IMG/VR virus record: IMGVR_UViG_3300034072_000758
Span: 124,001-188,000 of that record
DNA: 64,000 bases
Direction: 5' to 3' (one strand)
Every line of letters begins with the position of its first letter. Positions within the stretch are counted from its first letter, which is position 1. The notes beneath the pieces were generated by a model, which did no database searches, was not told the DNA's origin, and worked only from the letters and a program-made list of their open reading frames with translations. Of the stretch, positions 33,211 through 58,316 are shown one piece after another. Position numbers and translations under genes: made by a program.

Positions 33211-33722
33211 TGGCTACAGGTCTCCAACTCGTATTGTTAATCCTCTTTTCGTCCCTCGCAATATTCGTCTTAAAGACGTTGACGAAGGGTAAGCTGTTGT
33301 TCGCCTCAAAGGATCGCCAGAAAGCTTACGCCGAATATATGATCCATAAGGGTTATATTTACAGTAAATATCAGGACCAGCGCCAGCTTCCATCCTTCAA
33401 CGTCTGGGAAAAGATGTCAAAGAAGTATATGGATTTGGAATTTATTGACGATTATTTTTCGGGCAATAGGCGCGGTGCTGATTGGTATGACGCCAACACT
33501 TTTCATTATACCTTCCCCGAATACGGTATGTTGGCCGTGGCCACGCGCGATGATGACCGAATGCTGCTGTTTTTTTCCGGTTCGGATTGGCGATTGGTTT
33601 ATCGTCTCAAGTTTGTGAACAACCTCAGCCGTGCCATATATCTCGGCGAAGGGCTGTACTTCGAGGGTAACCCGGAACAGTTCGAAAACACAATGTCGAT
33701 CATCAAGCTGAAAGCGTCATGA
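33210..33722 (+). CDS. Membrane-anchored C-terminal-motif protein (G-N/D subfamily)
   Basis: N-terminal TM; ends LYFEGNPEQFENTMSIIKLKAS*. Confidence 0.72.
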   Translation: MATGLQLVLLILFSSLAIFVLKTLTKGKLLFASKDRQKAYAEYMIHKGYIYSKYQDQRQLPSFNVWEKMSKKYMDLEFIDDYFSGNRRGADWYDANTFHYTFPEYGMLAVATRDDDRMLLFFSGSDWRLVYRLKFVNNLSRAIYLGEGLYFEGNPEQFENTMSIIKLKAS

Positions 33723-34120
33723 ACGTAAGAGACGATATTGCGTTCTGGGCTAAAATCTTAAACGCTTCTGATGTTGATCGAGTAGTCAAACTCAATGGCT
33801 ATCAGTTTAAAGCTAAGTATAACGCCAATGGTTTAGTTCAAAGTTTTGTTTCGAGATCACATAACGAGTGGCGTAGCAGTCTTATGTTGATTTTTGAAAA
33901 CAGCTTATTTCGTTTTACCGTAAACGCTGTAATCAATATTGTGGATTCAAATCGTCCGCCCTCTGATTTTCATGAACTTCCAATGTTACATACCAAACCG
34001 TTCAATCCAATAGTATTTCGGATAGAACAATATGGTTCACATAAACTCGAATTATTCGACTGGACAGAAGACGAGTTCGATAGTATGGTTATGTCTCTTT
34101 ATTTGAAGTTGAAAGACTGA
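33719..34120 (+). CDS. C-terminal-motif protein (DxxFW subfamily)
   Basis: Starts MNVRDDIAFW; ends TEDEFDSMVMSLYLKLKD*. Confidence 0.72.
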   Translation: MNVRDDIAFWAKILNASDVDRVVKLNGYQFKAKYNANGLVQSFVSRSHNEWRSSLMLIFENSLFRFTVNAVINIVDSNRPPSDFHELPMLHTKPFNPIVFRIEQYGSHKLELFDWTEDEFDSMVMSLYLKLKD

Positions 34121-34638
34121 TGTATATCACAATCATCGCCGTTTTCATGACTGTGTTGTCTTTGGTACGAATGTATCAGGAGATCATAGCTTATTGCACC
34201 ACTCGGATCATATCGCTTGTTGATGTTGAAAACCGCAACTTCGGTATTTTTAACATCAACATTATTCGGAATAGCTGGGTGCGCAAGATTGCGAAGCCGC
34301 GCAATTTTGATGAACGCCTTATCGACATTCTGATCAACAAGTTCCCCGAAAAGCTGGACAAGAACGGCTCGGCCAAGATGTCGAAGAATGGGACCATTCT
34401 CGAACTCCAAGGTTCGTTCAACGATGACCATTATCATTTCCGACGCCTCGGCGGTCGAAAGCCTTGGGTCGAAGTGAAAACCGCCAAGTGGGTTCTGACC
34501 AAGGCTCCCTTTATTCATCCCACACTTAACCCAACACCCAAAGGTAATTGGGTGAAGATTGGCGACAATTATTTCGTCGGTGGCGACATCGCGCGGTTTG
34601 AAGACGATGTTGCGATTATCGCTCTCACACACAATTAA
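34120..34638 (+). CDS. Membrane-anchored C-terminal-motif protein (G-N/D subfamily)
   Basis: Ends YFVGGDIARFEDDVAIIALTHN*. Confidence 0.72.
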   Translation: MYITIIAVFMTVLSLVRMYQEIIAYCTTRIISLVDVENRNFGIFNINIIRNSWVRKIAKPRNFDERLIDILINKFPEKLDKNGSAKMSKNGTILELQGSFNDDHYHFRRLGGRKPWVEVKTAKWVLTKAPFIHPTLNPTPKGNWVKIGDNYFVGGDIARFEDDVAIIALTHN

Positions 34639-34645
34639 GCGGCAA

Positions 34646-35011
34646 ATGGAACCAGATGCCTTCCGTGCCCCGAAAGATGATGAAGTCGTAATCGCCCCGA
34701 AATACGACCACGAACTCCTGCGACAAGAGTTCATCAAGATCGCCAAAATTCTCACGGAACATAATTTATTCACGGAATATGGCGATCTTTACGATTACCG
34801 GGTTGGTAGTCGGGGATACTCAGTTTATATAAGCGGAGATTTTGTCGAATTTTCATTATACGAATACGCCGATACTGGACACCGATTTATGAAAACCCCG
34901 ATCTATTCGGCGTCATATATAAAGTGTAAAATATTGTCATATTCTGTCGTAGACATGACACAAGACGAAATCATCGAACAATTGCTTTTATTTGTGTTGA
35001 TGCTGAAATGA
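34646..35011 (+). CDS. C-terminal-motif protein
   Basis: Ends TQDEIIEQLLLFVLMLK*. Confidence 0.68.
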   Translation: MEPDAFRAPKDDEVVIAPKYDHELLRQEFIKIAKILTEHNLFTEYGDLYDYRVGSRGYSVYISGDFVEFSLYEYADTGHRFMKTPIYSASYIKCKILSYSVVDMTQDEIIEQLLLFVLMLK

Positions 35012-35343
35012 CAATTATGCGCGCAATACCACTGGATAAAGCTGATCTATCTCGGCCATTCCTGTATGCGCGCTTTATCGGCGTCCGCCATTTCGATGGC
35101 GAGTGGATAGAAGCCATGCGCCACATATGCTTCCAATGGTATGAAACTGATTTCTCCAATTTGCCACCACTCGCCGTCCACCATTGCTTCTTTCGTATGA
35201 TCAGCGGAACATGTATGTTCGATCCTGCCGTCAGCTTATCGATCATCGCAGCCCACCGCAAAAATTTGACCCGGCGTGAGCAACGTATATTGGGTAATGA
35301 CATTCTGTTTTTCGATCAAGCCAAGAAGGTGTCTGATGGCTAA
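35008..35343 (+). CDS. Hypothetical protein
   Basis: ATGA-coupled, 111 aa. Confidence 0.6.
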   Translation: MTIMRAIPLDKADLSRPFLYARFIGVRHFDGEWIEAMRHICFQWYETDFSNLPPLAVHHCFFRMISGTCMFDPAVSLSIIAAHRKNLTRREQRILGNDILFFDQAKKVSDG

Positions 35344-35734
35344 GGATATGCCAACATACAAGATACCCTTCCAACCAGTCATCGATCTCTTTAATAAGGG
35401 TGTAGAGGACGGGGAGATCAAACAGTTCCCCGGCGCTGAACAGATTGATATGCGCGGTGAGCTTGGAACGTTTAAAATCACGTTTCGCAATCAATGGGTC
35501 CAGCTTACTTCATTCATCGCCTGTAGCCATGTTTTGCGTCTTCGTGGTGGATCGGTTGACGTGAGGTTCTATTTGACCTCCTGCGTCCCACAGGCGGCTG
35601 ACGCCTATTTGTTAAATTTGGGCCTTCCTTACTATCCTCGGTATCATTTGATACAATATAGCGTTCATGCGCGAAAGAATATCAAGAAGGCCGAAGACGA
35701 ACTTGCTATCTTCCTATTAACAAACGGACTATAG
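35336..35734 (+). CDS. C-terminal-motif protein
   Basis: Ends KKAEDELAIFLLTNGL*. Confidence 0.68.
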   Translation: MAKDMPTYKIPFQPVIDLFNKGVEDGEIKQFPGAEQIDMRGELGTFKITFRNQWVQLTSFIACSHVLRLRGGSVDVRFYLTSCVPQAADAYLLNLGLPYYPRYHLIQYSVHARKNIKKAEDELAIFLLTNGL

Positions 35735-35745
35735 GGAACAAACCA

Positions 35746-36508: not shown

Positions 36509-36850
36509 ATGATTCGGGTCACTGAGCTTCTACACAAGATGCTTCGTGTCCATAGACACAATTTCAATAGCGTCAATTGGCCTCAAATTCATAGAATACA
36601 TCGAGGTGAAAATTTTATGCTTGAAATGATCATACCATTTCATGCGACGATTGATATAAAATACACCAGCCCTAATCTAATTCTGAGGTCAAATCTTAAA
36701 CATGCGACCGATTTCAGCCAACATGCTATTCGCTGGTACGCGCTGCTGGGGCCGCTCGAACAATGCTACAACATCGTCGCAGAAGAAACTCAGTTCCTCA
36801 GTGATCAAGCAGACTGTGAACTTGCTACACTGGTGTTAAAGTATTCATGA
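36509..36850 (+). CDS. C-terminal-motif protein
   Basis: Ends SDQADCELATLVLKYS*. Confidence 0.65.
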   Translation: MIRVTELLHKMLRVHRHNFNSVNWPQIHRIHRGENFMLEMIIPFHATIDIKYTSPNLILRSNLKHATDFSQHAIRWYALLGPLEQCYNIVAEETQFLSDQADCELATLVLKYS

Positions 36851-37248
36851 CTAACATCGATCTCTTCTTCATGATCTGCACCCTCATAAACAAGTATGAG
36901 GATAAGCTTACCCTAACGGAAGCTGGTAGTGGAGACTTTAGCTTTAGACAACTCAAAGGAAGAGTTTTGATAGGTGGGGTTTACACCAATCTTGAATATT
37001 CTGCGCCTAACCCAATATACGTCTCGTTGAAGACGACGAACATCCACATTTATTGTGGAATGACGACCGTTAGTATGTTGAGTAATATCTCCCTAGAAGA
37101 TTACTTGAGAGCACCACTCAATATTTTAGAATCTTATTATTTTATAAACGCATATTTACACAACCCAGAGAAAAATGTTACAGTCAGTTACAAGAGCAAA
37201 GATCGCGCAGAAGATCATCTTATGATTCTCAGGCTGGCAGCATCATGA
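36847..37248 (+). CDS. C-terminal-motif protein
   Basis: Ends KDRAEDHLMILRLAAS*. Confidence 0.7.
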   Translation: MTNIDLFFMICTLINKYEDKLTLTEAGSGDFSFRQLKGRVLIGGVYTNLEYSAPNPIYVSLKTTNIHIYCGMTTVSMLSNISLEDYLRAPLNILESYYFINAYLHNPEKNVTVSYKSKDRAEDHLMILRLAAS

Positions 37249-37652
37249 CCGACATAACAGAAGACATTGAGTGGTGGGGAACTTTGTTTTCCGACATCGC
37301 GGCTCGATATAAAGTCGAAGAGACCTCTGATAAAATGCTGCTGTCGATTCCACTATCGAACCACAGTGTTGTGGAATGCTCGGCCTATCAACGCAAGAAC
37401 CCACCTATCGGTATGGAGTTCGTGGACATGAAATTCTCGTCCAGAAACTTCACCTTTTCATTCAATCTGTCTCGTCCCTATAAGGATAACGGGATGACTA
37501 TCGACCGACTGCGTTCAGGAGGCTTCGGCGAAGGGGTGATCATGTTCGATGATAACCAATTCCTGTACTATGACGTGAAGATGTTCGAGCACGGCACCAC
37601 CGCCGAAATCGATGAAGACCTCATGTTGCTGCGGCTGGCGTTCGCTTCCTGA
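37245..37652 (+). CDS. C-terminal-motif protein (DxxFW subfamily)
   Basis: Starts MTDITEDIEWW; ends TAEIDEDLMLLRLAFAS*. Confidence 0.72.
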   Translation: MTDITEDIEWWGTLFSDIAARYKVEETSDKMLLSIPLSNHSVVECSAYQRKNPPIGMEFVDMKFSSRNFTFSFNLSRPYKDNGMTIDRLRSGGFGEGVIMFDDNQFLYYDVKMFEHGTTAEIDEDLMLLRLAFAS

Positions 37653-38071
37653 TGCTTAGTATAACGGATCATATTTTCCAAGATTTTAAGTTCTGGGACT
37701 CTATCGTAGACCGGGGAGACGAATTAATTTCATGGGGCGTTCATGTTGAAGAGTTGGACAATACCAACAAATATCAATTCTATAGTAACACACATAAGGT
37801 TAGACTAACGAGTACAGATTATAATTGCTTCTCGTATAGTATAGAAGCTTCTTGTTTCGTCTTCCAATATGAGATCATTGGGTCTATGTTGTCTTTGAGT
37901 GAAGAGAAACAATTCTGGACGCGATATTACTCTGAATTTCCATACTCCCCAAAAAACATCATCGAACTTTACCCCGGCGTATATTATGATTGCCACGCAT
38001 ATCATCTTGAAGTAAAATCCGAACCAGACGCAATTGACCTAATCACTCGCCTGAGATTGACCTATGTATGA
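37652..38071 (+). CDS. C-terminal-motif protein (DxxFW subfamily)
   Basis: QDFKFW near the start; ends EPDAIDLITRLRLTYV*. Confidence 0.7.
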   Translation: MLSITDHIFQDFKFWDSIVDRGDELISWGVHVEELDNTNKYQFYSNTHKVRLTSTDYNCFSYSIEASCFVFQYEIIGSMLSLSEEKQFWTRYYSEFPYSPKNIIELYPGVYYDCHAYHLEVKSEPDAIDLITRLRLTYV

Positions 38072-38843
38072 CGATACCACCGACAAATTCTGGAAGCTGT
38101 ACGGCGATGATCTATGCGAGCAATTGAGTGAACAATCCTGCGATCCAGACAATAAGATGTATGACCATATCGGGGTCATCAATTATGATCGCATCAACAT
38201 GCTCAATATCCGAATGTTTGTTGAAGTGACCTTGGAAGGTCAGGAGCCGTTTTGCGTGGAATACGAAAGCGGTAACAACAACGGCTTCGCCATCCATAAA
38301 TTTGGCCCAAATATCCAGTTCGAAGAATACGAACCAGATGTTCGTTACTTCGCGCCGACGCATATTGACACCTATGTTCGAAATCTAACGTATATCCGCG
38401 AGCAAGAGCGGAAGATGAACTACGATTTTCACTTCGACCCCTCATCGAGGATTTTTAAATATTATAATGATTGGGCCAGCAACAATGCTTGCGCCATATC
38501 AACACGCGAACCCTATAAGATTCTGAAATACGAACATGCTCAAAAAATGGTCCTGACCGTCATGGATCATAAAGACGATGGTGTGAAACTATCCAAGTTT
38601 ACTCAAGCCTACAGATTGTTTCACCAAATCGCCGAAGCGGCTACTTGGACTTTGTATTGGCAACACTGTCCTACCGAAATCGAACGCTATGACGAATATA
38701 TTCCCTCGGCGGGGCATCTATCGCCACCACGCTATCGTATCGAGTACCGATTTGGCGATAACAAAGGGACGGCTGTGTATCTTCGCGGAAACGTGGCTGA
38801 CTTTGAAGACTATGCGATGCGGGCTATACTAATGTCAAAATAA
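38064..38843 (+). CDS. C-terminal-motif protein (G-N/D subfamily), two-domain
   Basis: Ends YLRGNVADFEDYAMRAILMSK*. Confidence 0.7.
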   Translation: MYDDTTDKFWKLYGDDLCEQLSEQSCDPDNKMYDHIGVINYDRINMLNIRMFVEVTLEGQEPFCVEYESGNNNGFAIHKFGPNIQFEEYEPDVRYFAPTHIDTYVRNLTYIREQERKMNYDFHFDPSSRIFKYYNDWASNNACAISTREPYKILKYEHAQKMVLTVMDHKDDGVKLSKFTQAYRLFHQIAEAATWTLYWQHCPTEIERYDEYIPSAGHLSPPRYRIEYRFGDNKGTAVYLRGNVADFEDYAMRAILMSK

Positions 38844-39210
38844 GGGTGGATAGATCGCATTCCATTTGTTCGCGGTCACCCTTGTATCTGCGTGTGCCCC
38901 AATCCAATTCCCAACCGAGGCCCTTCATAGCCAGAACAAAAATCTGACTAGCTGTCCCGTTGAAGAAACAGACGTTGAGTGTGATGCTCATGGTTATACC
39001 ACTGATTTCAAATGGTATAAAAATCTTGCGGCGGGACGACCCCATCTTAAGCCCGGTATCTCTTGACATCCGAGCGAAATTCACATGCTCCTGATCAGCA
39101 AGTCCACGCACCGAAGTTTCTATGCTTTTGATCTTTACCAGATTATCCCATTCTAACGCTTTGGTCAGTGTCTTAGGATCATTCGGATAGGGTTTGCTGA
39201 ACCACATCAT
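38824..39210 (-). CDS. C-terminal-motif protein (G-N/D subfamily)
   Basis: Ends RYKGDREQMECDLSTLILTLV*. Confidence 0.7.
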   Translation of the reverse strand: MMWFSKPYPNDPKTLTKALEWDNLVKIKSIETSVRGLADQEHVNFARMSRDTGLKMGSSRRKIFIPFEISGITMSITLNVCFFNGTASQIFVLAMKGLGWELDWGTRRYKGDREQMECDLSTLILTLV

Positions 39211-39641
39211 ACTGTCACTTCCGATAGCAGCAAGACAATCGTTGTGACATCTTCTTCAAAACGAGCCGCGTTACCTTTGAACTGGTACTTGCTTCGTTTT
39301 CCGATATTCACCCCGGCGGTATTGTGCTTCAATATCCATTCGGGAGAAATAACAGAGTCGATTACAAAATCACGACGCAAATCACCGCCAAAAAAAGTGT
39401 GTAGCGCTTCCACCGCGATCTTCACAGAACTAAACTCAAGCTGATGCTTGTGAAGAAGGGTGAATTTATTTTGTGCGAACTCAGGCACGTGACCCAAATA
39501 CTGAATCTCGATTACTTCCTTCATTTTGCGTATACTATCCTGCATTTGTGCGGATTCACGCAAAAGCCTCAGCGCCTTTTCGACAACCGTAGCATCATGA
39601 ACCGTCTTGAAAGGAAGAAGGGGTAAGAATAGGGTTTTCAT
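39207..39641 (-). CDS. C-terminal-motif protein (G-N/D subfamily)
   Basis: Ends QFKGNAARFEEDVTTIVLLLSEVTV*. Confidence 0.7.
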   Translation of the reverse strand: MKTLFLPLLPFKTVHDATVVEKALRLLRESAQMQDSIRKMKEVIEIQYLGHVPEFAQNKFTLLHKHQLEFSSVKIAVEALHTFFGGDLRRDFVIDSVISPEWILKHNTAGVNIGKRSKYQFKGNAARFEEDVTTIVLLLSEVTV

Positions 39642-39987: not shown

Positions 39988-40181
39988 TGCTCGATCTCAT
40001 TATTCACGAATGGCGGTTGTTCGTCACTTGTGCGGTTCAGGCCAGCGCAGTTTACATCGTCATTCGCATCAATCTTCCAGCAAGTGATGGTGAGCGTTTC
40101 CCCGGTGGGCGTAGGGCCATGCTGTCGGCGTTCATTCTGTTTCTAGTCTTCTTCTTGTGCGGAGTATCCCATGTTGCCTGA
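39987..40181 (+). CDS. Small membrane protein
   Basis: Two TM segments; coupled. Confidence 0.6.
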   Translation: MLDLIIHEWRLFVTCAVQASAVYIVIRINLPASDGERFPGGRRAMLSAFILFLVFFLCGVSHVA

Positions 40182-43753: not shown

Positions 43754-43762
43754 CGATTGATT

Positions 43763-44308
43763 ATGGAATTTTTGACTTCGCCCTTGTTTACTATGTTAGT
43801 GACCTGCGGGTTCATCTTTCTCGTGGTATTCGGCTCACAGTTGAAACAAATTCTGCGGGATTATCATCCCCGGTATAAAGACTATCTTTTTGACCGGGCC
43901 AAGCATATGAAAGCCACCACAAAACCCGCTCAGTATCCTTTGCCGGGGGTGTATCCTCTTGCTGCGGTCCCACTTGAACTAAGTATCACGTATCCATCGT
44001 TCAGTAAATGGCTACGCATGGAGCATATCAGCGAGCCAATGAACCTCGATTTTACTAATACTATCGGCGGTCAAGTGGATGCGGACTATGTGTTTACTTA
44101 CTACTTCAACAAGTCGAACATAATAGTCATGTACCGTGACCTAGAGCGTTATCTACAGTTCAAGACCGAAAAGTGGAATTGCAATCTCAGCTATATGCTC
44201 ATTGAGAAGCCAAGCAAGAAGACTTACCTGATCGATGGAAAATATTTCGTTCAAGGCGATCTGGCTCAATTCGAAGAAGATATGATGTCTCTAAGGTTAT
44301 TGAACTGA
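43763..44308 (+). CDS. Membrane-anchored C-terminal-motif protein (G-N/D subfamily)
   Basis: N-terminal TM; ends YFVQGDLAQFEEDMMSLRLLN*. Confidence 0.72.
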   Translation: MEFLTSPLFTMLVTCGFIFLVVFGSQLKQILRDYHPRYKDYLFDRAKHMKATTKPAQYPLPGVYPLAAVPLELSITYPSFSKWLRMEHISEPMNLDFTNTIGGQVDADYVFTYYFNKSNIIVMYRDLERYLQFKTEKWNCNLSYMLIEKPSKKTYLIDGKYFVQGDLAQFEEDMMSLRLLN

Positions 44309-44769
44309 TGGAACTCAATCTTCGCCAATTGACAATTATTATGAATAAGATCGCGGACAATGCCATTGATATTAGGGAAAGTGGCGGAAGCAACAGTCCA
44401 AACTTTTCCGGTAAAGATTACGCCAATCGCGCATTGTCTCGATTTAAATTTATTATCACTGGTGATATAAAGGCTGGGATTTGTTACAATCTTCGTGCCG
44501 GGAATTGGGATTGCTCGGCTCCACCTTTCCATGTAGTACATACAAACTGGTTGGTCATTTTGATCCACCATCCTAAATTCAGACTCCGATACAAAGTGGA
44601 TATGCCAGAGTTTAACAGAAACAAGTTAAATGGTCCTTTTGCTATGAAAATTAAAGACCATTATGCCACCGCCGAATGTTATTGTGAGGGGACCATTGTT
44701 GGTTACCGCCTCACCCCATTAGCTTCGATTGAAGAAGTCGAAGAAGAGTTAGTAAAGCTTCTCCTATGA
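44308..44769 (+). CDS. C-terminal-motif protein
   Basis: Ends SIEEVEEELVKLLL*. Confidence 0.7.
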   Translation: MELNLRQLTIIMNKIADNAIDIRESGGSNSPNFSGKDYANRALSRFKFIITGDIKAGICYNLRAGNWDCSAPPFHVVHTNWLVILIHHPKFRLRYKVDMPEFNRNKLNGPFAMKIKDHYATAECYCEGTIVGYRLTPLASIEEVEEELVKLLL

Positions 44770-46508: not shown

Positions 46509-46911
46509 TAATTTATTAAATAACTTCTCGCATTGGCGAGGATTCCTCAAATATGCCACGATTTCTGGTAGTGCCAGCCCGTATACTCTAATGGGATCGT
46601 TTTATGTCGGGGAACACCAAGGCGAAATCATCATTGATGGATACGAGCGCGCCACCGGAAAGCATTTGCGTAAAGTGATGGTCCGAATTAGCTTCAACCA
46701 CACGGTTTATACGCTCAATACGATTGGTGTAGTCCCTATGTCTATAGAGGCGTTTAACATTTATGAGCGTGAAGATCGTTTTTATAAACTACCTCTTTTG
46801 GATGTTAGAACCTATCTGTATGACCAAAGCATCCAATCCACCAAGTTCATAACCACGCTCTCGCAAGATGAACTGGACGAGTTAGAAATCTTATTGAAGT
46901 TACACACATGA
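46477..46911 (+). CDS. C-terminal-motif protein
   Basis: Ends SQDELDELEILLKLHT*. Confidence 0.65.
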   Translation: MHYSMLSSARSNLLNNFSHWRGFLKYATISGSASPYTLMGSFYVGEHQGEIIIDGYERATGKHLRKVMVRISFNHTVYTLNTIGVVPMSIEAFNIYEREDRFYKLPLLDVRTYLYDQSIQSTKFITTLSQDELDELEILLKLHT

Positions 46912-47243
46912 TCCCAGCTTTGATGAAAACGAACTTTTGGGCGAGCCTGTGGAAAAATGCCGCCGCCACAAGTCATCCCACCCAGAAGATAGTAAATACG
47001 CCTTACGGAGACGTTACGGTTCAGTTTTGTTACGGATCGGTGAGCGCGGTCCACGAAGCGTTCTCGTACCGTGGGCGGGTGCGTACAGCCGTTGATGATA
47101 GTGAACATGTTGAGGTGTTCTGGACAGAAACCGCTTCGAACAAATACGAGCCGGACATCTGGAATATGGCCTCAAAGATTTTTGACAAAGAGGTTGCCGA
47201 AAACGTGATCACCATCCTTGTTCTTAAATATGTCCCAGAGTAA
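46908..47243 (+). CDS. C-terminal-motif protein (DxxFW subfamily)
   Basis: KTNFW; ends KEVAENVITILVLKYVPE*. Confidence 0.68.
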   Translation: MIPALMKTNFWASLWKNAAATSHPTQKIVNTPYGDVTVQFCYGSVSAVHEAFSYRGRVRTAVDDSEHVEVFWTETASNKYEPDIWNMASKIFDKEVAENVITILVLKYVPE

Positions 47244-47679
47244 GCCGTCATATTATACCACTAAATTCTGGTCGGACGTTTTGATAGCGTCCGAGCAAAC
47301 GACCACGCCGTTTAATGGCAAACAACATCAATCCGTGGCAACGTATCTCGATCTTACCATCACGATCACTTTCCCCATCGTGACAAATAAAAGCCCGATC
47401 CCCATAATCCATTTTAGAGTTAAGAAGGCCGGAAAATACCTGATCAAATTCAAATTGACCCGTAAGCGTGATTTACCCAATCTTATACTGGATAGTCGTG
47501 GTAGGGTTCTTAAAAGCAAGAACCGCGTTACTACAACATTGTTACCGATTAAAAACAGCTTCATTCGCAAGCCGGTCGGTCTGACGGTCGAGGATTTCAA
47601 ATTTAAACTCTATAAAAAAATGACTTTTGAACAGTTTGAAGACGATTTGACCCTCCTTAAGCTATTGACCAGCCAGTGA
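47230..47679 (+). CDS. C-terminal-motif protein (DxxFW subfamily)
   Basis: TTKFW; ends TFEQFEDDLTLLKLLTSQ*. Confidence 0.7.
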   Translation: MSQSKPSYYTTKFWSDVLIASEQTTTPFNGKQHQSVATYLDLTITITFPIVTNKSPIPIIHFRVKKAGKYLIKFKLTRKRDLPNLILDSRGRVLKSKNRVTTTLLPIKNSFIRKPVGLTVEDFKFKLYKKMTFEQFEDDLTLLKLLTSQ

Positions 47680-47719: not shown

Positions 47720-48148
47720 GTGAAGTATCTTACCGATTTGTCTTTTTGGTCGAAAATTATTGATGGTTGTAATGAACCGTCTCCGAATCCCTATAAAAAT
47801 CCATATGGTAAGAATCCTCCCGTAAAACGAAGTGATAAAAATAACCTTCGGGTGAGTTTCAAGATTTACGGAACCGTTGGTAAGCATCTTGGTTCGGTAA
47901 CTGTTACTATACATCTTCTAGGTAAGTTCAAGTTAGTCTTACATACTAAAAATGAATTAGATACCACTCGATATTTTTCCCGTGGCGAGCAAGCCATTAT
48001 TCCGAAAAACCACACCCCAATATACGTATACGATGATGCTTTCATTATCGCCTACACCAAAGTTGAAACGCACAAATTGACTTTGATGCGAAATATGACT
48101 ATAGAAAAATTCGAAGACGAAGTTCTTAGACTATCGCTGGCCTTATGA
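47720..48148 (+). CDS. C-terminal-motif protein (DxxFW subfamily)
   Basis: TDLSFW; ends TIEKFEDEVLRLSLAL*. Confidence 0.7.
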   Translation: MKYLTDLSFWSKIIDGCNEPSPNPYKNPYGKNPPVKRSDKNNLRVSFKIYGTVGKHLGSVTVTIHLLGKFKLVLHTKNELDTTRYFSRGEQAIIPKNHTPIYVYDDAFIIAYTKVETHKLTLMRNMTIEKFEDEVLRLSLAL

Positions 48149-48479: not shown

Positions 48480-48899
48480 GTGACACATCCCGCGATGATG
48501 GGTTATAACTACTCTTCGAAAGAGTATGACAATCTCGGTTTATGGATGGATATTGTCAACTTCACTAAACCTGACACTAAAACCCCAGCGCGCGTGTTGG
48601 GCGATACGTATTTCCATGTTCAGTGGGGAATGTCCAATGGATATTCTAATGTGTTCTACTTGGACATTATAAACCCATTTTTTTCAGCCGCGATTATGGG
48701 GACGCTGTATAAAGAACCAAAGCGCATACAATTTGCTGAGGACGAACCTGAACTGGTGTGGTGCGAAAACAAGAGACTGTCTGTCAGCTACCCGTACTAT
48801 ATAAAAGACGACCGATGCGATTTCAGCGTCAATCCTCTTAAATCAACTTGGGATGAAGTTGATTCGGCGATCATGGCTTTACGATTGTTGGCGAGTTAA
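48480..48899 (+). CDS. C-terminal-motif protein (DxxFW subfamily)
   Basis: DNLGLW; ends TWDEVDSAIMALRLLAS*. Confidence 0.7.
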   Translation: MTHPAMMGYNYSSKEYDNLGLWMDIVNFTKPDTKTPARVLGDTYFHVQWGMSNGYSNVFYLDIINPFFSAAIMGTLYKEPKRIQFAEDEPELVWCENKRLSVSYPYYIKDDRCDFSVNPLKSTWDEVDSAIMALRLLAS

Positions 48900-50227: not shown

Positions 50228-50550
50228 GACGCAACGATGTGGTCTTTTGCCATTCTGGGGCGACACGCGACCCTCCACACTTTTCGCCGTATGGGCGGAT
50301 AGTAAAGAGAGTCGGCGATAAGTTCGAAGTTATCTTCTGTAACGGAGAGCGTTGGACGCTGGCGGAAGATGACCTGACTATCCATTACTATGGCGGGCGG
50401 ATCGATACGAAAACCAACTGGCATCCGACTAAGATCAGGCCCTTGAAAGAATGGCAGATCGTCGTTCGATTCCCAACACTCCGTAAGCTGAAAGCCATAG
50501 CTGCGCGGTATGAACGGGCTTATGGTAAGAAGAACATGTTTGATGAATGA
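50224..50550 (+). CDS. Hypothetical protein
   Basis: ATGA-coupled, 108 aa. Confidence 0.6.
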   Translation: MRRNDVVFCHSGATRDPPHFSPYGRIVKRVGDKFEVIFCNGERWTLAEDDLTIHYYGGRIDTKTNWHPTKIRPLKEWQIVVRFPTLRKLKAIAARYERAYGKKNMFDE

Positions 50551-50914
50551 TTGGAAAATTTGGGTTCAAATAATCAATAATATGCGGTGGGCTACTTACG
50601 GAAGTAAGTGGCTTAAAACACCTTATGAGTTTATGTATGCAAGTGTTTTCTTTGTGGGTGGCGGAGAAAATATGCTCTATACTTATCGCATCGTCATCAC
50701 TCTTAAATCTAAATTCAAGATAGAATTAACATTTAATTTTCGATTGGACCCATTTTCTACCTTGGAGTTTGATGTTAGGTCTAATGAGGAAGCCCCGTAT
50801 CGTATTGATCCTAGCACCATGACTATGACCGCGCGTCAATATGCGCCCACAATCATCACTCAAGATGAAATGGATGAAATCTTGATAGTCCTAACTCTGA
50901 CTGCTTTCGAGTAA
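50543..50914 (+). CDS. C-terminal-motif protein (DxxFW subfamily)
   Basis: MNDWKIW; ends TQDEMDEILIVLTLTAFE*. Confidence 0.7.
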   Translation: MNDWKIWVQIINNMRWATYGSKWLKTPYEFMYASVFFVGGGENMLYTYRIVITLKSKFKIELTFNFRLDPFSTLEFDVRSNEEAPYRIDPSTMTMTARQYAPTIITQDEMDEILIVLTLTAFE

Positions 50915-52593: not shown

Positions 52594-52892
52594 GCATCGA
52601 AGAATATATCGCACGAACCAATAGCGATTGGGCCAATGAGGGTAGCGGATACCAGATGTATCGAGTCTGGTACTCGCGCCGCGCTGGCCACAAAGAGTTC
52701 ATGTTCCAAGGTGGGAAATCTCAAGCGGAAGCTGAGGATTTAGCGCAGGATCATTTCGACAATCGGGATGAACATAACCGCCAGCATCATGGTCATGCCA
52801 AGGTTATTCGCACAACGCCCGTGGCCAAGTCTGTGGATGCTCAGGCACCAAAGGCGACATTCGGTGACTGGTTACGTAACCTGTTCCGCTAG
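52590..52892 (+). CDS. Hypothetical protein
   Basis: ATGA-coupled to thrS. Confidence 0.6.
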   Translation: MSIEEYIARTNSDWANEGSGYQMYRVWYSRRAGHKEFMFQGGKSQAEAEDLAQDHFDNRDEHNRQHHGHAKVIRTTPVAKSVDAQAPKATFGDWLRNLFR

Positions 52893-53242
52893 ATCGTTAG
52901 CGCCAGCTTTATTAACATTTCGTCCATAGCTTCCTGATCGTTCGTGTGGTATTCAAGAAGCTTTAGGCTTGTGAACGAGACCATAAAACCGTTACCCGTA
53001 TGTATTGTGTAGAATGGCTCCGGTTGCATTACATATGCCGGGGTCATTTCTATTTTAGCAGATAATAAACTATGCTCTATTTCAAGCATATTTCTGCGTT
53101 TCTCCATAGTAATCGTAATTTTATATTCACCGATATTATATATTGCGGGCGTTATTCCAGCATCATTGCTCCCCATCCATTGCGTATGATCCGCGTCAGA
53201 AACAAGCTTTAGAATGAATTGGGGATTTTCGAGGATATTCAT
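52889..53242 (-). CDS. C-terminal-motif protein
   Basis: Ends DQEAMDEMLIKLALTI*. Confidence 0.7.
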   Translation of the reverse strand: MNILENPQFILKLVSDADHTQWMGSNDAGITPAIYNIGEYKITITMEKRRNMLEIEHSLLSAKIEMTPAYVMQPEPFYTIHTGNGFMVSFTSLKLLEYHTNDQEAMDEMLIKLALTI

Positions 53243-54711: not shown

Positions 54712-55226
54712 TCGTGCCACCGGTAGAAGACGTATTCCATCATCAGCGGAATGATCTAGTTACGCAAATGTATGAAGGTAAAGTTGAGAAGAAAGCCGTA
54801 ATGAGCTTTCTTTTCGACATTATCACGGATATGTATGGTATCATGCGATCCGAAACTGTGCTCCCACCGGAATTTCATCAGGACTACGTTTTTCTCAAAC
54901 TAAATCTCGAACATTATATGAATGATCGGGAAGTTCCCGACGATGTTATTGGTGATCATACTATACCACAAAGGTATGACATGTATGGTCTTCATATGCT
55001 CATATACATTATGACTAAGTTCCAAAAAACACTTAGAGGTGAACATATGTTATTCACCAGTTCTAGCCAATCATTCTTTCGTTTGATCCCTTCGTTCTTT
55101 ACTTACATAAAGCATCGAGGTCAGGACAATTTTAAGATCGATGACATATTGACATCGCGGGTAATGTTGTATTACGATAACGTAAGCAAGTTTCGTTTCG
55201 GATACCCATTAAGGCCCACGAATTGA
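54708..55226 (+). CDS. Hypothetical protein
   Basis: Coupled 172-aa ORF. Confidence 0.6.
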   Translation: MIVPPVEDVFHHQRNDLVTQMYEGKVEKKAVMSFLFDIITDMYGIMRSETVLPPEFHQDYVFLKLNLEHYMNDREVPDDVIGDHTIPQRYDMYGLHMLIYIMTKFQKTLRGEHMLFTSSSQSFFRLIPSFFTYIKHRGQDNFKIDDILTSRVMLYYDNVSKFRFGYPLRPTN

Positions 55227-55642
55227 AAATCGAACAACTCAAAGCTCTGATCTACAAGACACCAATCAACAGGCGCAATCGGGTAACCCCCGATACATTC
55301 ATGGTGTCCACTGATGAATACCAAGTATTCTTGCGCTTGGTACGAAAGCCCGATGGGCTAATCGCCGAAGTCGCGCTCGCAACGAAGACCCTTCATATCA
55401 AATCTCAGATGTCGATCTTCGAGCTACCGGGTGGGGATGTTCTCGAAGCCGCAGATGCACCCAATCGTTTTCCGGTAGCCATCGGCGCTGCGAACAGGAT
55501 GGTATTGAAAGGCGTCGAGCCATCTACGTTTAAGGTTGTCGATTGCCGCGCCCTACGCCAAACCAAAGATGGCGCGCAAAGCTATATCGACCCCGAAGAA
55601 GTCGAGAACGAGCTTATGCTTCTCGTCCTCATGGAACTGTAA
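55223..55642 (+). CDS. C-terminal-motif protein
   Basis: Ends DPEEVENELMLLVLMEL*. Confidence 0.7.
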   Translation: MKIEQLKALIYKTPINRRNRVTPDTFMVSTDEYQVFLRLVRKPDGLIAEVALATKTLHIKSQMSIFELPGGDVLEAADAPNRFPVAIGAANRMVLKGVEPSTFKVVDCRALRQTKDGAQSYIDPEEVENELMLLVLMEL

Positions 55643-56037: not shown

Positions 56038-56079
56038 AAATTTAATAGAAATTAAGGGTATATTTTGATACAACAAAAT

Positions 56080-56574
56080 ATGTCCAGTGATTACATGTTT
56101 GACAAACTTGATGTGTGGTTGGCGCTTTTAGCCAAAGCCAAACCCGTTAGTTCCCAGATAGAAACTCTTGCCGATAAGCGTTTACGCATTCGGTATAAGT
56201 ATCTACCTGACGAGAAGCTGTCGATCCTCGTCCGCGAACCTATCTTCAAATACAAGACCTACCGCAACGGTGGCTTCATCGATTATGAACGATTTCGATA
56301 TTGGGTTGAAAATCCCGGTCGGCCTATGCCCCGTGAAGGTTTCTATGATTTCCTTCATCACCCGATGGAAGTGGTATTCAAGTATCGAAACACTTTTCAG
56401 TTCACGATCAAATTCCAAGCTTGTAAGGGTCGGGCTGCCTTTCCGGTAAGAACGGTTTTAGACAATGGTGAATACCATATGTCCTACTGTATGGAGCAAT
56501 CCCTTCGCCCTATTCGTAAATCGTCTCAAGAAAAAATTGATGAAGCCATGATGCGATTGGCGTTGACGCTATGA
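56080..56574 (+). CDS. C-terminal-motif protein (DxxFW subfamily)
   Basis: DKLDVW; ends SQEKIDEAMMRLALTL*. Confidence 0.7.
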   Translation: MSSDYMFDKLDVWLALLAKAKPVSSQIETLADKRLRIRYKYLPDEKLSILVREPIFKYKTYRNGGFIDYERFRYWVENPGRPMPREGFYDFLHHPMEVVFKYRNTFQFTIKFQACKGRAAFPVRTVLDNGEYHMSYCMEQSLRPIRKSSQEKIDEAMMRLALTL

Positions 56575-56945
56575 GAATCCAAGATGATGTTCAATTCTGG
56601 GCTGCGCTGTGTCATACATGCGATAAATTTGTTGTGCCTTATCCTGTGTCGGTGAAAGGTGTATCGAGATATTGGCCAGTCGAATATCATCATACCGAGC
56701 TACCACTTTCATTTTATATTTTATATAATGTTTCAAAACCCGGCATCATTCGAGTAATATATAAGCACAAATTCATGTGCGTTATGAAAGTACGATTTGG
56801 TGAGGTTCCGTTCACCTTAAACCGCCATGAAGCTGTTGATCTTGAGGACGTATTTCATACAAAAATAAAGCCGTTACGCGGGACTTCTATTGAAGAAGTG
56901 GAAGATATATTGGTTAACCTTCGTTTGTCTGTTGACCTTGTGTAA
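56571..56945 (+). CDS. C-terminal-motif protein (DxxFW subfamily)
   Basis: MRIQDDVQFW; ends SIEEVEDILVNLRLSVDLV*. Confidence 0.72.
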   Translation: MRIQDDVQFWAALCHTCDKFVVPYPVSVKGVSRYWPVEYHHTELPLSFYILYNVSKPGIIRVIYKHKFMCVMKVRFGEVPFTLNRHEAVDLEDVFHTKIKPLRGTSIEEVEDILVNLRLSVDLV

Positions 56946-56960
56946 GTACAAGTATACACT
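56932..56960 (+). promoter_or_regulatory. Sigma70-like (early) promoter
   Basis: TTGACC-N17-TACACT. Confidence 0.5.
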
Positions 56961-56984
56961 ACACCTCTAAGTGGGAGTGATGTT

Positions 56985-57377
56985 GTGCTTAAAGACTTTG
57001 AGTTGTGGCGTGATATTTTCTATATGGCCGAGACGGTCTATGTAGAGGATAAAAATTTTTTTATTTGTAAAAAGCGTTTAGATGCTAGTGACATCAGCAT
57101 GTATATAGAAGTCAAGTTGGATAAAGAACGTCCAGAAGACTTGATTACTATGACCGTCAAGTCGGAGCATTTTGACACCAAAATCATTCTCACACCCGCT
57201 GAGGTGGGTGATTATGAAGAAGACACCATGTTATTTCAAATTACCAGCAATGCGGCTTTATTTATTGATCGGGAAGCTCGTGTTGAATACGAGTTGAATG
57301 ACTGTTCAGAAGCACAGATTATGGAAAAAATCGGCCACTATCGCTTGCTGTCCACACCGTCTCTAGGGACAGCTTGA
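56985..57377 (+). CDS. DxxFW-subfamily protein with a variant C-terminal motif
   Basis: MLKDFELW; SEAQIMEKIGHYRLL. Confidence 0.62.
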   Translation: MLKDFELWRDIFYMAETVYVEDKNFFICKKRLDASDISMYIEVKLDKERPEDLITMTVKSEHFDTKIILTPAEVGDYEEDTMLFQITSNAALFIDREARVEYELNDCSEAQIMEKIGHYRLLSTPSLGTA

Positions 57378-57401
57378 CAAATACTGTATCTATGGTAAGG
57401 T
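57374..57401 (+). promoter_or_regulatory. Sigma70-like promoter
   Basis: TTGACA-N16-TAAGGT. Confidence 0.45.
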
Positions 57402-57444
57402 ATAGTCATCGAATATGACTTTCACTTATTGAAGGATACCAAAT

Positions 57445-57663
57445 ATGAGCAAGCGTCGAGACGACATCTTCAAGCAAAGCCGTTTCTTCACGGTTCAAGA
57501 CGCTGTTCGTGAGCGTCATGCCTATGACGCCATGCTGGAAGAAAAGGCCCGCAAGCGCCAAATCAAGGAACTGGAAGGCCGTCTTAAGCTGGCCTTGAAG
57601 CATGGCTGGGAGCACATCGCCGCCCGCACCCAAGCCCGTCTCGAAAAGCTCAAGGCTGCGTAA
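57445..57663 (+). CDS. Small basic coiled-coil protein
   Basis: AAGGA SD; 72 aa. Confidence 0.7.
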   Translation: MSKRRDDIFKQSRFFTVQDAVRERHAYDAMLEEKARKRQIKELEGRLKLALKHGWEHIAARTQARLEKLKAA

Positions 57664-57944
57664 TGGGTAAGTCTCGTAAAACCAACGTCATGAACGCGGT
57701 CTTTAATGGACGTGAGGGCGATCTCAAGGGCGCTGAAAAAGCGACGTTTGATCGCATGTTCACCAAGATCGACAACGGCGCAAAGCTGTCAGCGGCGACC
57801 GAGGTGAAGGACTTCGATTTCAATGGCGATTTCGGCGCTGGGTTCCGTCATGGGAATAAGCGTAAAGCTATGGCCGCGATGAAAGTCCTCAAGCGCAAAT
57901 CAGATCGCGCCAAGGGCAAGAAGGTCGATTTAAGCGGCGACTAA
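57663..57944 (+). CDS. Small basic protein
   Basis: TAATG-coupled; Lys-rich. Confidence 0.7.
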   Translation: MGKSRKTNVMNAVFNGREGDLKGAEKATFDRMFTKIDNGAKLSAATEVKDFDFNGDFGAGFRHGNKRKAMAAMKVLKRKSDRAKGKKVDLSGD

Positions 57945-58316
57945 CAATATGTTGGTCAGGATGTCTTCAACTTCTTCCCGACGATCAACGTTCGGACGAC
58001 CTTCGATATATGATCCCGATAACATCCAGACAACACCCGTCTCCATCGTAAATTTCATGACAATATATTTGTGGTGATATTTGGGATCATCAATTAGAGT
58101 GAATTTGAAGCCGGAAATATACACGCCCGCTTCGTCTTCTATCTTGACGATACAATGGCTGGCGTTAAACTCGCTCATACTATTTGTCGCGGCAAGTGAT
58201 ATTTTACCCATTGGCGAAATGATCTCGGCCACGGAGACACCATCGTTGATGTCAAACTTCGTCGTGTAACGATTGAACAGATCGATCCAAAAGTTCATAT
58301 GATCGTATTTCATCAC
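57930..58316 (-). CDS. C-terminal-motif protein (DxxFW subfamily)
   Basis: DHMNFW; ends REEVEDILTNILLVAA*. Confidence 0.72.
   Translation of the reverse strand: MMKYDHMNFWIDLFNRYTTKFDINDGVSVAEIISPMGKISLAATNSMSEFNASHCIVKIEDEAGVYISGFKFTLIDDPKYHHKYIVMKFTMETGVVWMLSGSYIEGRPNVDRREEVEDILTNILLVAA

What the first reader, a model, noticed from the sequence alone, without database searches (positions are those of the whole stretch)
33719..58316. Second subfamily with a conserved N-terminal D-x-x-(F/I/L)-W helix as well as the C-terminal motif, and a hypervariable middle
Seen: about 14 ORFs of 110-170 aa begin with DDIAFWAKIL, EDIEWWGTLF, QDFKFWDSIV, EDIVFWVTMA, KTNFWASLW, TTKFWSDVL, TDLSFWSKII, DNLGLWMDIV, NDWKIWVQII, EAEIWVKLI, DKLDVWLALL, DDVQFWAALC, KDFELWRDIF, DHMNFWIDLF. 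They end in T/S-x-E-E-h-E-E-x-h. The middles are rich in alternating (beta-strand-like) hydrophobic residues with no visible identity. Inference: N- and C-helices form a conserved scaffold that displays a fast-evolving beta-sheet, like a phage-encoded library of binders.
Basis: partly seen in the sequence, partly recalled or inferred. Interest (0 to 1): 0.6.

Follow-up and report, generated by a model that had tools for sequence, protein, structure and literature searches.

The report
Giant phage's expanded small-protein family
A 517-kb uncultured giant phage carries at least 38 very diverged copies of one small protein, part of a set of about 100 genes with the same tail helix; it has no detectable relative elsewhere and its function is unknown.

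Summary
All 14 ORFs exist, have codon usage typical of genes, and form one profile-defined family (here "FW"). It has 18 members in the window and at least 38 in the complete 516,805-bp phage genome. Trp sits in one aligned column in 30 of 38 members. The C-terminal capped amphipathic helix occurs at the extreme C-terminus of about 73-105 of 700 genes, against 0.4-3.4 in shuffles.

AlphaFold models of an FW member and of the sister "SF1" subfamily both give helix, antiparallel sheet, helix. No Pfam, PHROG or PDB match was found.

An exhaustive profile search of 1.84 billion proteins returned only this genome's own paralogs. Five related 457-578-kb phage genomes have no FW gene. One of them has its own family of about 258 small proteins with a similar C-terminal helix.

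"Hypervariable" is not shown:
- there is no reverse transcriptase;
- there are no DNA repeats among copies and no recent duplicates (best pair about 30% identical);
- strain variants show mostly synonymous change.

Best reading: an old lineage-specific expansion of one small alpha/beta domain with a conserved core and a free surface. It is probably a host-interaction repertoire, but that function is untested.

The parts
33719..34120 (+). FW family member (claimed), 133 aa
   Evidence: family profile E 6e-14, C-helix profile E 1e-5, coding score +0.20
36847..37248 (+). FW family member (added; Ile in place of Trp), 133 aa
   Evidence: family profile E 1e-8, C-helix E 2e-6
37245..37652 (+). FW family member (claimed), 135 aa
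   Evidence: family profile E 2e-14; 4-nt overlap with the neighbouring gene
37652..38071 (+). FW family member (claimed), 139 aa
   Evidence: family profile E 2e-14
45781..46143 (+). FW family member (claimed), 120 aa
   Evidence: E 5.8e-11 with the 30-member profile, 2e-3 with the 38-member profile
46908..47243 (+). FW family member (claimed), 111 aa
   Evidence: family profile E 2e-11
47218..47679 (+). FW family member (claimed), 153 aa
   Evidence: family profile E 3e-14, C-helix E 1e-9
47720..48148 (+). FW family member (claimed), 142 aa
   Evidence: family profile E 2e-14
48480..48899 (+). FW family member (claimed), 139 aa; variable patch at 48759-48836 in other strains
   Evidence: family profile E 6e-12; strain differences stop before the C-helix
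49479..49838 (+). FW family member (added), 119 aa
   Evidence: E 2.2e-8, C-helix E 1e-6
50510..50914 (+). FW family member (claimed), 134 aa
   Evidence: family profile E 4e-15; a public gene call starts downstream of the Trp helix
50918..51334 (+). FW family member (claimed), 138 aa
   Evidence: family profile E 7e-10
52889..53242 (-). FW family member (added; Ile in place of Trp), 117 aa
   Evidence: family profile E 4e-13, C-helix E 4e-6
56065..56574 (+). FW family member (claimed), 169 aa
   Evidence: family profile E 5e-10
56571..56945 (+). FW family member (claimed), 124 aa; the protein that was modelled
   Evidence: family profile E 4e-14; AlphaFold2 model with pLDDT 73.5
56985..57377 (+). 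FW family member (claimed), 130 aa
   Evidence: family profile E 7e-10
57930..58316 (-). FW family member (claimed), 128 aa
   Evidence: family profile E 2e-13
29297..29650 (-). FW family member outside the stated span, 117 aa
   Evidence: family profile E 1e-5, C-helix E 7e-7
44308..44769 (+). borderline FW member, 153 aa
   Evidence: family profile E 7e-4, C-helix E 1e-2
10789..11205 (-). borderline FW member with an N-terminal Trp helix, 138 aa
   Evidence: family profile E 0.03, C-helix E 4e-3
27362..27916 (+). SF1 sister subfamily (strand, G-N/D, F-E-E/D-D helix), with an N-terminal hydrophobic (membrane-like) segment
   Evidence: SF1 profile E 4e-20
32253..32897 (+). SF1 member with N-terminal hydrophobic segments
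   Evidence: SF1 profile E 4e-17
32914..33210 (+). SF1 minimal domain, 98 aa; the protein that was modelled
   Evidence: SF1 profile E 4e-26; AlphaFold2 pLDDT 84.8, helix, six strands, helix
33210..33722 (+). SF1 member with an N-terminal hydrophobic segment
   Evidence: SF1 profile E 1e-35
34120..34638 (+). SF1 member
   Evidence: SF1 profile E 3e-10, C-helix E 2e-5
38064..38843 (+). SF1 C-terminal domain on a 259-aa protein whose N-terminus also has an F-W helix motif
   Evidence: SF1 profile E 4e-14; N-terminus read
39207..39641 (-). SF1 member
   Evidence: SF1 profile E 1e-20
43757..44308 (+). SF1 member with an N-terminal hydrophobic segment
   Evidence: SF1 profile E 4e-34
29647..29901 (-). 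other small gene carrying only the C-terminal helix motif
   Evidence: C-helix profile E 2e-6
55223..55642 (+). other small gene carrying only the C-terminal helix motif
   Evidence: C-helix profile E 3e-5
27913..28668 (+). other gene carrying the C-terminal helix motif, 251 aa
   Evidence: C-helix profile E 2e-2
29898..30251 (-). other small gene carrying the C-terminal helix motif
   Evidence: C-helix profile E 1e-2
38824..39210 (-). other small gene carrying the C-terminal helix motif
   Evidence: C-helix profile E 3e-2

Best explanation
Shown. The ORFs are real genes of one very diverged paralogous family in a complete 516,805-bp phage genome with direct terminal repeats. The family has at least 38 copies, 18 of them in the window. 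It is one branch of a set of about 100 genes (about 15% of the genome's genes) that end in the same capped amphipathic C-terminal helix.

Predicted. Each FW protein is a single small alpha/beta domain: an N-terminal Trp helix, a four-stranded antiparallel sheet, then a C-terminal helix joined to the last strand by only a few residues.

Inferred.
- The conserved residues (Trp13, Phe47, Phe60, Tyr82, Leu100/103/105, and the S/T-x-x-E cap) are the hydrophobic core and helix caps. Loops and the solvent face of the sheet are free to drift. This gives conserved ends and an unrecognisable middle without any special mutational mechanism.
- The copies arose by old duplications in this lineage and are kept by purifying selection.
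- The most likely role is a repertoire of intracellular host-interaction modules, for host takeover, anti-defence or exclusion. They appear to be made from long, tightly packed polycistronic gene runs. No target is known.
For: Genes are real.
- All 38 ORFs have a positive codon-usage score, mean +0.22 against -0.07 for shadow ORFs.
- They tile the strand with short overlaps.
- Other strains show mostly third-position changes.

One family.
- Profile E-values reach 1e-25.
- Trp sits in one column in 30 of 38 members.
- Conserved core positions are listed.

Fold.
- The FW model is helix, four strands, helix, with pLDDT 73.5. The C-helix is the most confident part, at 92-95.
- The SF1 model has the same order of elements, with pLDDT 84.8.

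Scale.
- The C-helix profile hits 73, 105 and 141 genes at E<0.1, 1 and 10. Shuffles give 0.4, 3.4 and 30.

Restricted to this lineage.
- An exhaustive profile search of 1.84e9 proteins gave 27 hits, all from this genome.
- There were 0 hits in five related complete genomes, against 30 in the positive control.
- My own profiles found nothing in two fully fetched relatives or in 1.2 Mb of 82 related loci.

Old expansion.
- The best pairs are about 26-32% identical, and similarity does not correlate with genomic distance.
- There are no DNA repeats among copies and no reverse transcriptase.

Gene runs.
- There is one strong terminator in 20 kb.
- No T4-type late-promoter motif lies in 33-58 kb.
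- Sigma-70-like sites sit at the divergent junction at 39.6-39.7 kb. These regulatory hints are weak.

Precedent. A lineage-specific expansion of a small protein in a jumbo phage is known: phage G has about 35 zinc ribbons (PMC7824862).
Against: - Function is wholly untested. There is no RNA run, no known partner and no identified host.
- The models rest on shallow, paralog-only alignments of 30 and 12 rows. I had no coordinates, so helix-helix packing and which face is exposed are not verified.
- Promoter-like sites are not above chance: 45 against 37.8 +/- 5.7.
- The strain data cover one FW gene and are only partly listed. The excess of non-synonymous change is not significant.
- The shared C-helix might be more than structural (see the first rival explanation).
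Confidence: 0.5

Rival explanations
1. The C-terminal helix is a shared docking or sorting peptide. It would be recognised by one common partner, such as a phage or host hub, a chaperone, or a packaging or degradation machine. The variable bodies would be cargo or adaptors.
For: - The motif is always at the extreme C-terminus.
- It is shared by families that are otherwise unalignable. The profile-profile comparison of FW and SF1 aligns only the last 19 residues, P 4.8e-4.
- Carriers include proteins with N-terminal hydrophobic anchors.
- Its N-terminal half is conserved and acidic.
- Each related genome has its own flavour of the helix across its families: K-L-K-W in G002, K-L-R-W or K-M in G001, L-x-L here.
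Against: - In both models the helix follows the last strand with a connection of 1-5 residues and no linker.
- It is the most confident element and carries 6-7 hydrophobic positions, as a buried core helix would.
- No candidate partner was identified.
- The genome-specific flavours can also come from expansion after the lineages split.
Confidence: 0.2
2. The families encode virion-associated proteins, either internal or ejected proteins or decoration proteins. This would resemble the paralogous head-protein families of other jumbo phages.
For: - The arrays begin a few kb from baseplate, spike and other virion genes at 19-27 kb.
- From my own knowledge, not tested here: paralogous internal head proteins are known in phiKZ-like phages, and T-even internal proteins share a short conserved targeting segment on variable bodies.
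Against: - There is no similarity to any virion protein.
- No T4-type late-promoter motif lies inside the arrays, while three of the four in the window lie in the 10-27 kb part that holds the virion genes.
- About 100 different virion components would be extraordinary.
- The related virions whose structural genes are conserved lack the family.
Confidence: 0.1
3. The middle is actively diversified, by a diversity-generating retroelement, cassette recombination or ongoing duplication, as 'hypervariable' implies.
For: - In other strains one FW gene has a 75-nt patch with 10% divergence and compensating indels, while its neighbours are 99-100% identical.
Against: - There is no reverse transcriptase.
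- There are no template-like or anchoring DNA repeats.
- There are no recent paralogs.
- Most strain changes are synonymous.
Confidence: 0.03
4. The ORFs are non-functional remnants or gene-calling artefacts, and the motifs are compositional.
For: - Only 13% of the longest-ORF starts have a Shine-Dalgarno-like motif, against 41% for long genes.
- Four of the 27 public gene calls start downstream of the Trp, and a fifth starts one residue before it.
Against: - All 38 ORFs have gene-like codon usage.
- They are intact and non-overlapping, and the motifs are position-specific with no matches in the controls.
- They are conserved in contigs from other studies.
Confidence: 0.02

Closest known systems
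Lineage-specific expansions of small proteins in jumbo phages (about 35 zinc-ribbon copies in Bacillus phage G; Iyer et al. 2021, PMC7824862)
   Same: Dozens of diverged copies of one small domain in a single very large phage genome, with unknown or regulatory function, interpreted as adaptation to biological conflict.
   Different: The fold differs and there is no metal-binding motif. The family has no homolog outside the genome. The scale is larger: at least 38 copies, and about 100 with the shared C-helix, where about 35 copies was called unprecedented.
SF1 subfamily of the same genome (strand, G-N/D, x-x-x-F-E-E/D-D helix)
   Same: Same genome regions. Same helix, sheet, helix order in the AlphaFold models. 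Same C-terminal capped helix.
   Different: No Trp helix; instead there is a conserved Trp in a strand. It has six strands rather than four. At least five of its 13 members (12, plus 34120-34638) carry N-terminal hydrophobic segments. Profiles align only over 19 residues.
About 258-copy family ending in F-K-L-K-W-L in a related 561-kb phage (IMG/VR UViG 3300046616_000314)
   Same: Small proteins of 71-185 aa. The last strand is followed by an S-E-E-D cap and a C-terminal amphipathic helix at the extreme end. The expansion is massive and old, with a median best-partner identity of 37%. The phage belongs to the same clade by a virion protein at 39% identity.
   Different: Profile-profile comparison with FW, SF1 or the C-helix profile is not significant, P 0.04-0.26. 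Its low-copy relatives in this genome (5-11 genes) are other genes than FW. It has no N-terminal Trp helix.
Helix-grip (SRPBCC/START), class I type III secretion chaperones, and KA1 domains
   Same: Small alpha+beta domains in which terminal helices pack on an antiparallel sheet. They appear among the weak structural matches.
   Different: Matches are at noise level: best Z 3.7, Foldseek E no better than 0.097, TM no higher than 0.47. There is no sequence signal.
Variable proteins of diversity-generating retroelements
   Same: The idea of a conserved scaffold with a variable binding surface.
   Different: There is no reverse transcriptase, no template repeat and no C-type-lectin or Ig fold.

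Membership tests
FW subfamily of this genome (as defined here) | Significant match to the family profile over the full length | tested here: met
   All 14 claimed ORFs score E 2e-3 to 4e-15 with the 38-member profile, and 5.8e-11 or better with the 30-member profile
FW subfamily of this genome (as defined here) | Trp (rarely Ile or Val) in the N-terminal helix column, and a capped amphipathic helix at the extreme C-terminus | tested here: met
   Trp in 30 of 38 members; all 14 claimed ORFs match the C-helix profile at E 4e-2 or better
One superfamily with SF1 (shared fold) | Significant profile-profile match beyond the C-helix, or superposable structures | tested here: inconclusive
   hhalign aligns only 19 C-terminal columns, P 4.8e-4, probability 32%. 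The models share the helix, sheet, helix order, but no model-to-model superposition was possible
F-K-L-K-W family of the related phage G002 | Profile-profile or iterated-search link | tested here: not met
   hhalign P 0.26 for FW. The pooled iterated search recruits 258, 10 and 5 ORFs in G002, G001 and G000, and none of them is FW or SF1
Any Pfam or PHROG family | Match at or near the curated threshold | tested here: not met
   Of 10 proteins, 9 have no Pfam family and the best hit is E 0.1, below the cutoff. The best PHROG hit is E 0.06
SRPBCC/START helix-grip fold | Structural match clearly above background covering the domain | tested here: not met
   Z 3.0-3.6 in pdb_via_wide, where the background for unmatched models is 7-8; Atlas TM 0.46
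Class I type III secretion chaperones | Structural match; acidic pI; dimer | tested here: not met
   Foldseek E 0.3-0.6, TM 0.24-0.31. Family pI median is 6.3, range 4.1-10.2. Dimerisation was not tested
Targets of diversity-generating retroelements | Reverse transcriptase and a template/variable repeat pair in the genome | tested here: not met
   No RVT_1 match, with a control that rings in 3 of 14 genomes; no matching DNA repeats
Solved structures (any) | Sequence-profile match to a PDB chain | tested here: not met
   The best hit is E 0.019 to a snake-venom protease, taken as chance; none for SF1

The most novel reading that the evidence does not exclude
Megaphages of this clade devote 10-15% or more of their genes to old, hyper-diverged expansions of about 100-aa alpha/beta proteins built on one capped C-terminal helix. 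Here that is about 100 genes. In a 561-kb relative it is about 258 ORFs, 15% of the DNA.

A different branch is expanded in each lineage. This would be a combinatorial repertoire of host-interaction or anti-defence modules on the scale of parasite or giant-virus multigene families. It would be the largest paralog families yet seen in phages, on a fold with no solved relative.
Probability: 0.3. Interest if true: 0.8.

Novelty: new variant of a known kind. Interest (0 to 1): 0.62.

Why it matters
Very large phages are full of genes of unknown function. Here a sizeable share of that dark matter collapses into one or a few small-domain families that each lineage has expanded on its own.

If the copies are host-interaction modules, they would give a tractable handle on how megaphages deal with many hosts or many defences: about 100 related small proteins that can be expressed and screened. 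They would also be a new natural scaffold that tolerates extreme surface variation.

The case shows a limit of database searches as well. The family is invisible even to an exhaustive profile search of 1.84 billion proteins, and it was placed in context only by fetching whole related genomes.

Tried and rejected
- **DNA similarity.** Megablast of 12 kb against 50,697 phage records gave only a 74-nt chance-level hit.
- **Family libraries.** Pfam and PHROGs gave nothing for FW or SF1, and nothing for the G002 family.
- **Word-index search.** The search with the family alignment returned only this genome's own proteins. One apparent outside hit lay on a Logan contig that is 100% identical to this genome.
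- **Locus search with a virion protein.** Against viral contigs, the single protein found nothing. The alignment of its homologs against genome contigs found only relatives at 21-25% identity.
- **Assembly loci as handles.** The genome search on loci from assemblies was not possible.
- **Fold searches.** Foldseek PDB, VIA-align wide, BFVD and the Atlas gave no match above background for either model. The best was VC0508 of Vibrio cholerae, Z 4.9, for SF1.
- **Protein atlas by features.** No usable hit. The Atlas's own model of this protein is poor, pLDDT 0.37.
- **PDB sequence search.** Nothing credible.
- **Cluster members.** No variants from other samples, so no protein-level dN/dS was possible.
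- **Tandem-duplication signal.** Similarity does not correlate with distance: Spearman -0.05, p 0.15.
- **Regulatory scans.** Sigma-70-like promoters are not above chance. The T4 late-promoter motif is not above chance in the window and is absent from the arrays.
- **Literature.** I found no description of this family.
- **Not run.** Complex prediction, because the report claims no specific binding. The third word-index search, because it was not needed for the claim.

Full report
**Setting.** The window is bases 124,001-188,000 of a single 516,805-bp contig with 45% G+C. The record is classed as a complete virus genome with direct terminal repeats. The window carries phage baseplate and spike genes (Phage_base_V plus a cell-wall hydrolase). 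It also carries a truncated class I and a class II aminoacyl-tRNA synthetase, a Bax1-I protein, a radical SAM enzyme, an AdoMet decarboxylase, a metallophosphatase, NADAR and DUF350. A 782-aa virion protein links it distantly to cultured phages: 25% identity to Agrobacterium phage Atu_ph07, and also PA5oct and Rak2-like phages. The same protein is 37-58% identical to homologs on metagenomic contigs, several of them 560-580 kb long. The DNA comes from a subsurface metagenome. Near-identical or 90-100% identical pieces occur in soil, wastewater and other runs from four further studies.

**Check of the observation.**
- All 14 ORFs exist as described.
- A profile seeded with them and iterated over all ORFs of the genome converges on 30 members. 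With C-terminal seeding it reaches 38, with E-values down to 1e-25.
- The operators' genome search with alignment A1 finds the same 30 members.
- Eighteen members lie in the window. The four additions are 29297-29650(-), 36847-37248(+), 49479-49838(+) and 52889-53242(-). There are two or three borderline ORFs.
- Trp occupies one aligned column in 30 of 38 members, usually at residue 8-22, against 1.4% Trp in the proteome. It is the most informative position of the profile, at 3.5 bits.
- Regex controls agree. The N-motif occurs in 42 small genes against 14.5 in shuffles. N- and C-motifs occur together in 12 genes against 0.1.
- The ORFs are genes. All 38 have gene-like codon usage, mean +0.22 nats per codon against -0.07 for shadow ORFs. 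They tile one strand with small overlaps.

**The C-terminal motif is much wider than the subfamily.**
- A profile of the last 30 residues hits 73, 105 and 141 of 700 genes at E<0.1, 1 and 10. Shuffled C-termini give 0.4, 3.4 and 30. Internal or N-terminal 40-mers give none.
- That is about 100 genes, or 15% of the genome. They are concentrated between 140 and 300 kb. They include 22-25 of the 53 genes in the finding's span.
- A second profile family, SF1, has 12 members in the first gene set and a 13th (34120-34638) when all window ORFs are scanned. It ends in strand, G-N/D, x-x-x-F-E-E/D-D helix. At least five of its members have N-terminal hydrophobic segments.
- FW and SF1 profiles align only over the last 19 residues, P 4.8e-4.

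**Structure.**
- AlphaFold2 on the 30-paralog alignment models 56571-56945 as helix 7-16, strands 46-53, 56-64, 68-76 and 91-101, then helix 107-121. pLDDT is 73.5 and pTM 0.68. The C-helix is the most confident part. The loop at 26-42 is unreliable.
- The 98-aa SF1 domain 32914-33207 models as helix 4-13, six strands, helix 83-97, with pLDDT 84.8 and pTM 0.76.
- In both models the C-helix follows the last strand after 1-5 residues. The conserved S/T (or N/D)-x-x-E reads as a helix cap.
- Besides Trp13, the profile conserves Phe47, Phe60, Tyr82 and Leu100/103/105. I read these as core residues (inference).
- I could not obtain coordinates, so contact between the two helices is not verified.
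- No structural search gave a match above background. The best Z was 3.7 for FW and 4.9 for SF1. Foldseek E was never below 0.015, and Atlas TM never above 0.47.
- The recurring weak flavours are helix-grip/START, type III chaperones and KA1. They are common small alpha+beta arrangements, not evidence of kinship.

**Relatives.**
- Pfam, PHROGs and PDB sequence searches are empty.
- The exhaustive profile search of 1.84 billion representatives returned 27 proteins at E no higher than 1e-3, and every one is encoded by this genome.
- That threshold is severe for a small, diverged family, so I fetched relatives directly.
- The genome search finds no FW match at E no higher than 1 in five complete related genomes of 457-578 kb, including Atu_ph07. 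The positive control gave 30 hits.
- I fetched two relatives whole: G001 (578 kb, virion protein 45% identical) and G002 (561 kb, 39% identical). My FW profile finds nothing in either, nor in 1.2 Mb from 82 related loci.
- The FW family is therefore private to this lineage as far as any available method can see.

**The phenomenon itself is not private.**
- G002 has 109 ORFs ending in [FLMIV]-[KR]-[LM]-[RK]-W within the last 16 residues, where 0.12 are expected. Its family profile recruits about 258 ORFs of 71-185 aa, which is 14.9% of the genome. Their consensus end is F-x-S-E-E-D-A-x-x-F-K-L-K-W-L.
- G001 has about 10 such genes. This genome has 5-11, and they are different genes from FW and SF1.
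- SF1-like ends (G-D-x-x-x-F-x-x-D-M-x-x-h-K-M/L) occur in about 7 genes of G001 and at least 5 of G002. They give weak reciprocal hits: hhalign P 8.5e-4 over 22 columns.
- Profile-profile comparison of the G002 family with FW, SF1 or the C-helix profile is not significant, P 0.04-0.26.
- So I describe a shared architecture: a small protein whose last strand is followed by an acidic cap and a terminal amphipathic helix. Different branches are expanded in different lineages. Common descent is plausible but unproven.

**Evolutionary mode.**
- The most similar FW pairs are only about 26-32% identical over about 110 residues. Only 2 of 38 members have any BLASTP partner. Similarity does not fall with genomic distance.
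- At the DNA level the copies share only 20-54-nt stretches of 60-80% identity over the motif-coding parts.
- There is no reverse transcriptase.
- Contigs of other strains cover parts of five FW genes at 90-100% identity.
- In 48480-48899 the differences cluster in 48759-48836, with compensating indels, and stop before the C-helix. They are 10 synonymous to 7 non-synonymous, against 19 to 2 in five neighbouring genes. Fisher p is 0.05, or 0.19 without the indel patch.
- The list of differences was truncated by the tool, and the contigs are of low depth.
- This is purifying selection, possibly relaxed. It is not programmed hypervariation.

**Regulatory context (weak).**
- There is one strong terminator, at 49447-49472.
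- Sigma-70-like sites are not above chance overall but are present at the divergent junction at 39.6-39.7 kb.
- T4-type late-promoter motifs are absent from 33-58 kb.
- Only 13% of the longest-ORF starts have a Shine-Dalgarno-like motif. That fits translational coupling or slightly shorter true starts.
- Four of the 27 public gene calls begin downstream of the Trp, and a fifth begins one residue before it. In-frame conservation of the motif argues for the longer forms (inference).

**Interpretation.**
- The best-supported reading is an old, lineage-specific expansion of one small alpha/beta domain. Its conserved ends are structural: core Trp, core Leu/Phe and helix caps. Its surface has drifted beyond recognition.
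- By analogy with other expanded accessory families of large viruses, and given the compact polycistronic arrays among auxiliary genes, I think a repertoire of host-interaction modules is the most likely function. Nothing here tests it.
- The main rival is that the C-helix is a common docking or sorting peptide. Its strict terminal position, its acidic half, its presence on otherwise unalignable and membrane-anchored proteins, and its genome-specific flavours speak for this. Its tight connection to the last strand and its strongly hydrophobic character speak against it.
- Virion-protein, active-diversification and artefact readings are unlikely for the reasons given under each rival explanation.

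**Known comparison and novelty.** Expansions of small proteins in jumbo phages are on record. About 35 zinc ribbons in phage G were called unprecedented (PMC7824862). This family is a new one of that kind. It has no sequence or structural relative, it is larger in scale, and it has a parallel and even larger expansion in a related megaphage.

Noticed in passing
L129-L157 (whole record G002 = IMG/VR UViG 3300046616_000314, 561,116 bp); dense at 360-400 kb, e.g. L147:6451-6669(+): About 258 ORFs of 71-185 aa (14.9% of the genome) form one family ending in F-x-S-E-E-D-A-x-x-F-K-L-K-W-L. By regex alone there are 109, against 0.12 expected. There is no Pfam or PHROG match. The median best-partner identity is 37%. 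This may be the largest paralog family seen in a phage.
   Followed up: partly
window 27362-27916, 32253-32897, 33210-33722, 43757-44308 (+): SF1 members carry an N-terminal hydrophobic segment followed by a Lys/Arg-rich stretch. This suggests a membrane anchor with the conserved domain on the cytoplasmic side. It was read from the sequence and no topology predictor was run.
   Followed up: no
window 38064-38843 (+): A 259-aa protein combines an N-terminal D-K-F-W-K-L helix motif of the FW kind with an SF1-type C-terminal domain. It may be a link or a fusion between the two subfamilies.
   Followed up: no
G000 genome 418788-419123(+), 419120-419647(+), 64020-64304(-), 28577-28915(+), 55465-56052(+) (outside the window): This genome has a third, low-copy family (about 5-11 genes) with D-E-D-A-x-x-F-x-L ends. 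It matches the G002 family profile: 11 C-termini at 6 bits or more, against 0.9 in shuffles.
   Followed up: partly
window 48759-48775 and 48943-48968: In contigs of two other runs, two 1-nt insertions are followed by two 1-nt deletions inside the FW gene 48480-48899, which recodes about 5 codons. Further indels lie in the spacer before the DUF350 gene. Neighbouring segments are 99-100% identical, so divergence between strains is patchy.
   Followed up: partly
window 30232-31752 (-) and 51361-52593 (+): There are two shortened aminoacyl-tRNA synthetase genes. One is a 506-aa class I enzyme (tRNA-synt_1 plus Anticodon_1). The other is a 410-aa class II enzyme (tRNA-synt_2b plus HGTP_anticodon). 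Both sit inside the small-gene arrays.
   Followed up: partly
window 40171-41672 (+): A run of five overlapping small ORFs of about 94-147 aa is rich in hydrophobic segments and has a strong T-over-A skew (AT skew -0.21). It looks like a cluster of small membrane proteins between the arrays.
   Followed up: no
window 25146-26084 (-), 13158-13871 (+), 9983-10369 (-), 11205-12569 (-): Auxiliary genes are present: a weak ART-PolyVal ADP-ribosyltransferase match (below the Pfam cutoff), a Bax1-I family membrane protein, an AdoMet decarboxylase and a radical SAM enzyme.
   Followed up: partly
protein P0032: A homolog of the virion protein (45% identity in A2; 44%) lies on a 1,136,180-bp contig from NCBI and Logan. 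This is either a bacterial or misassembled contig or an exceptionally large phage. It was not examined.
   Followed up: no
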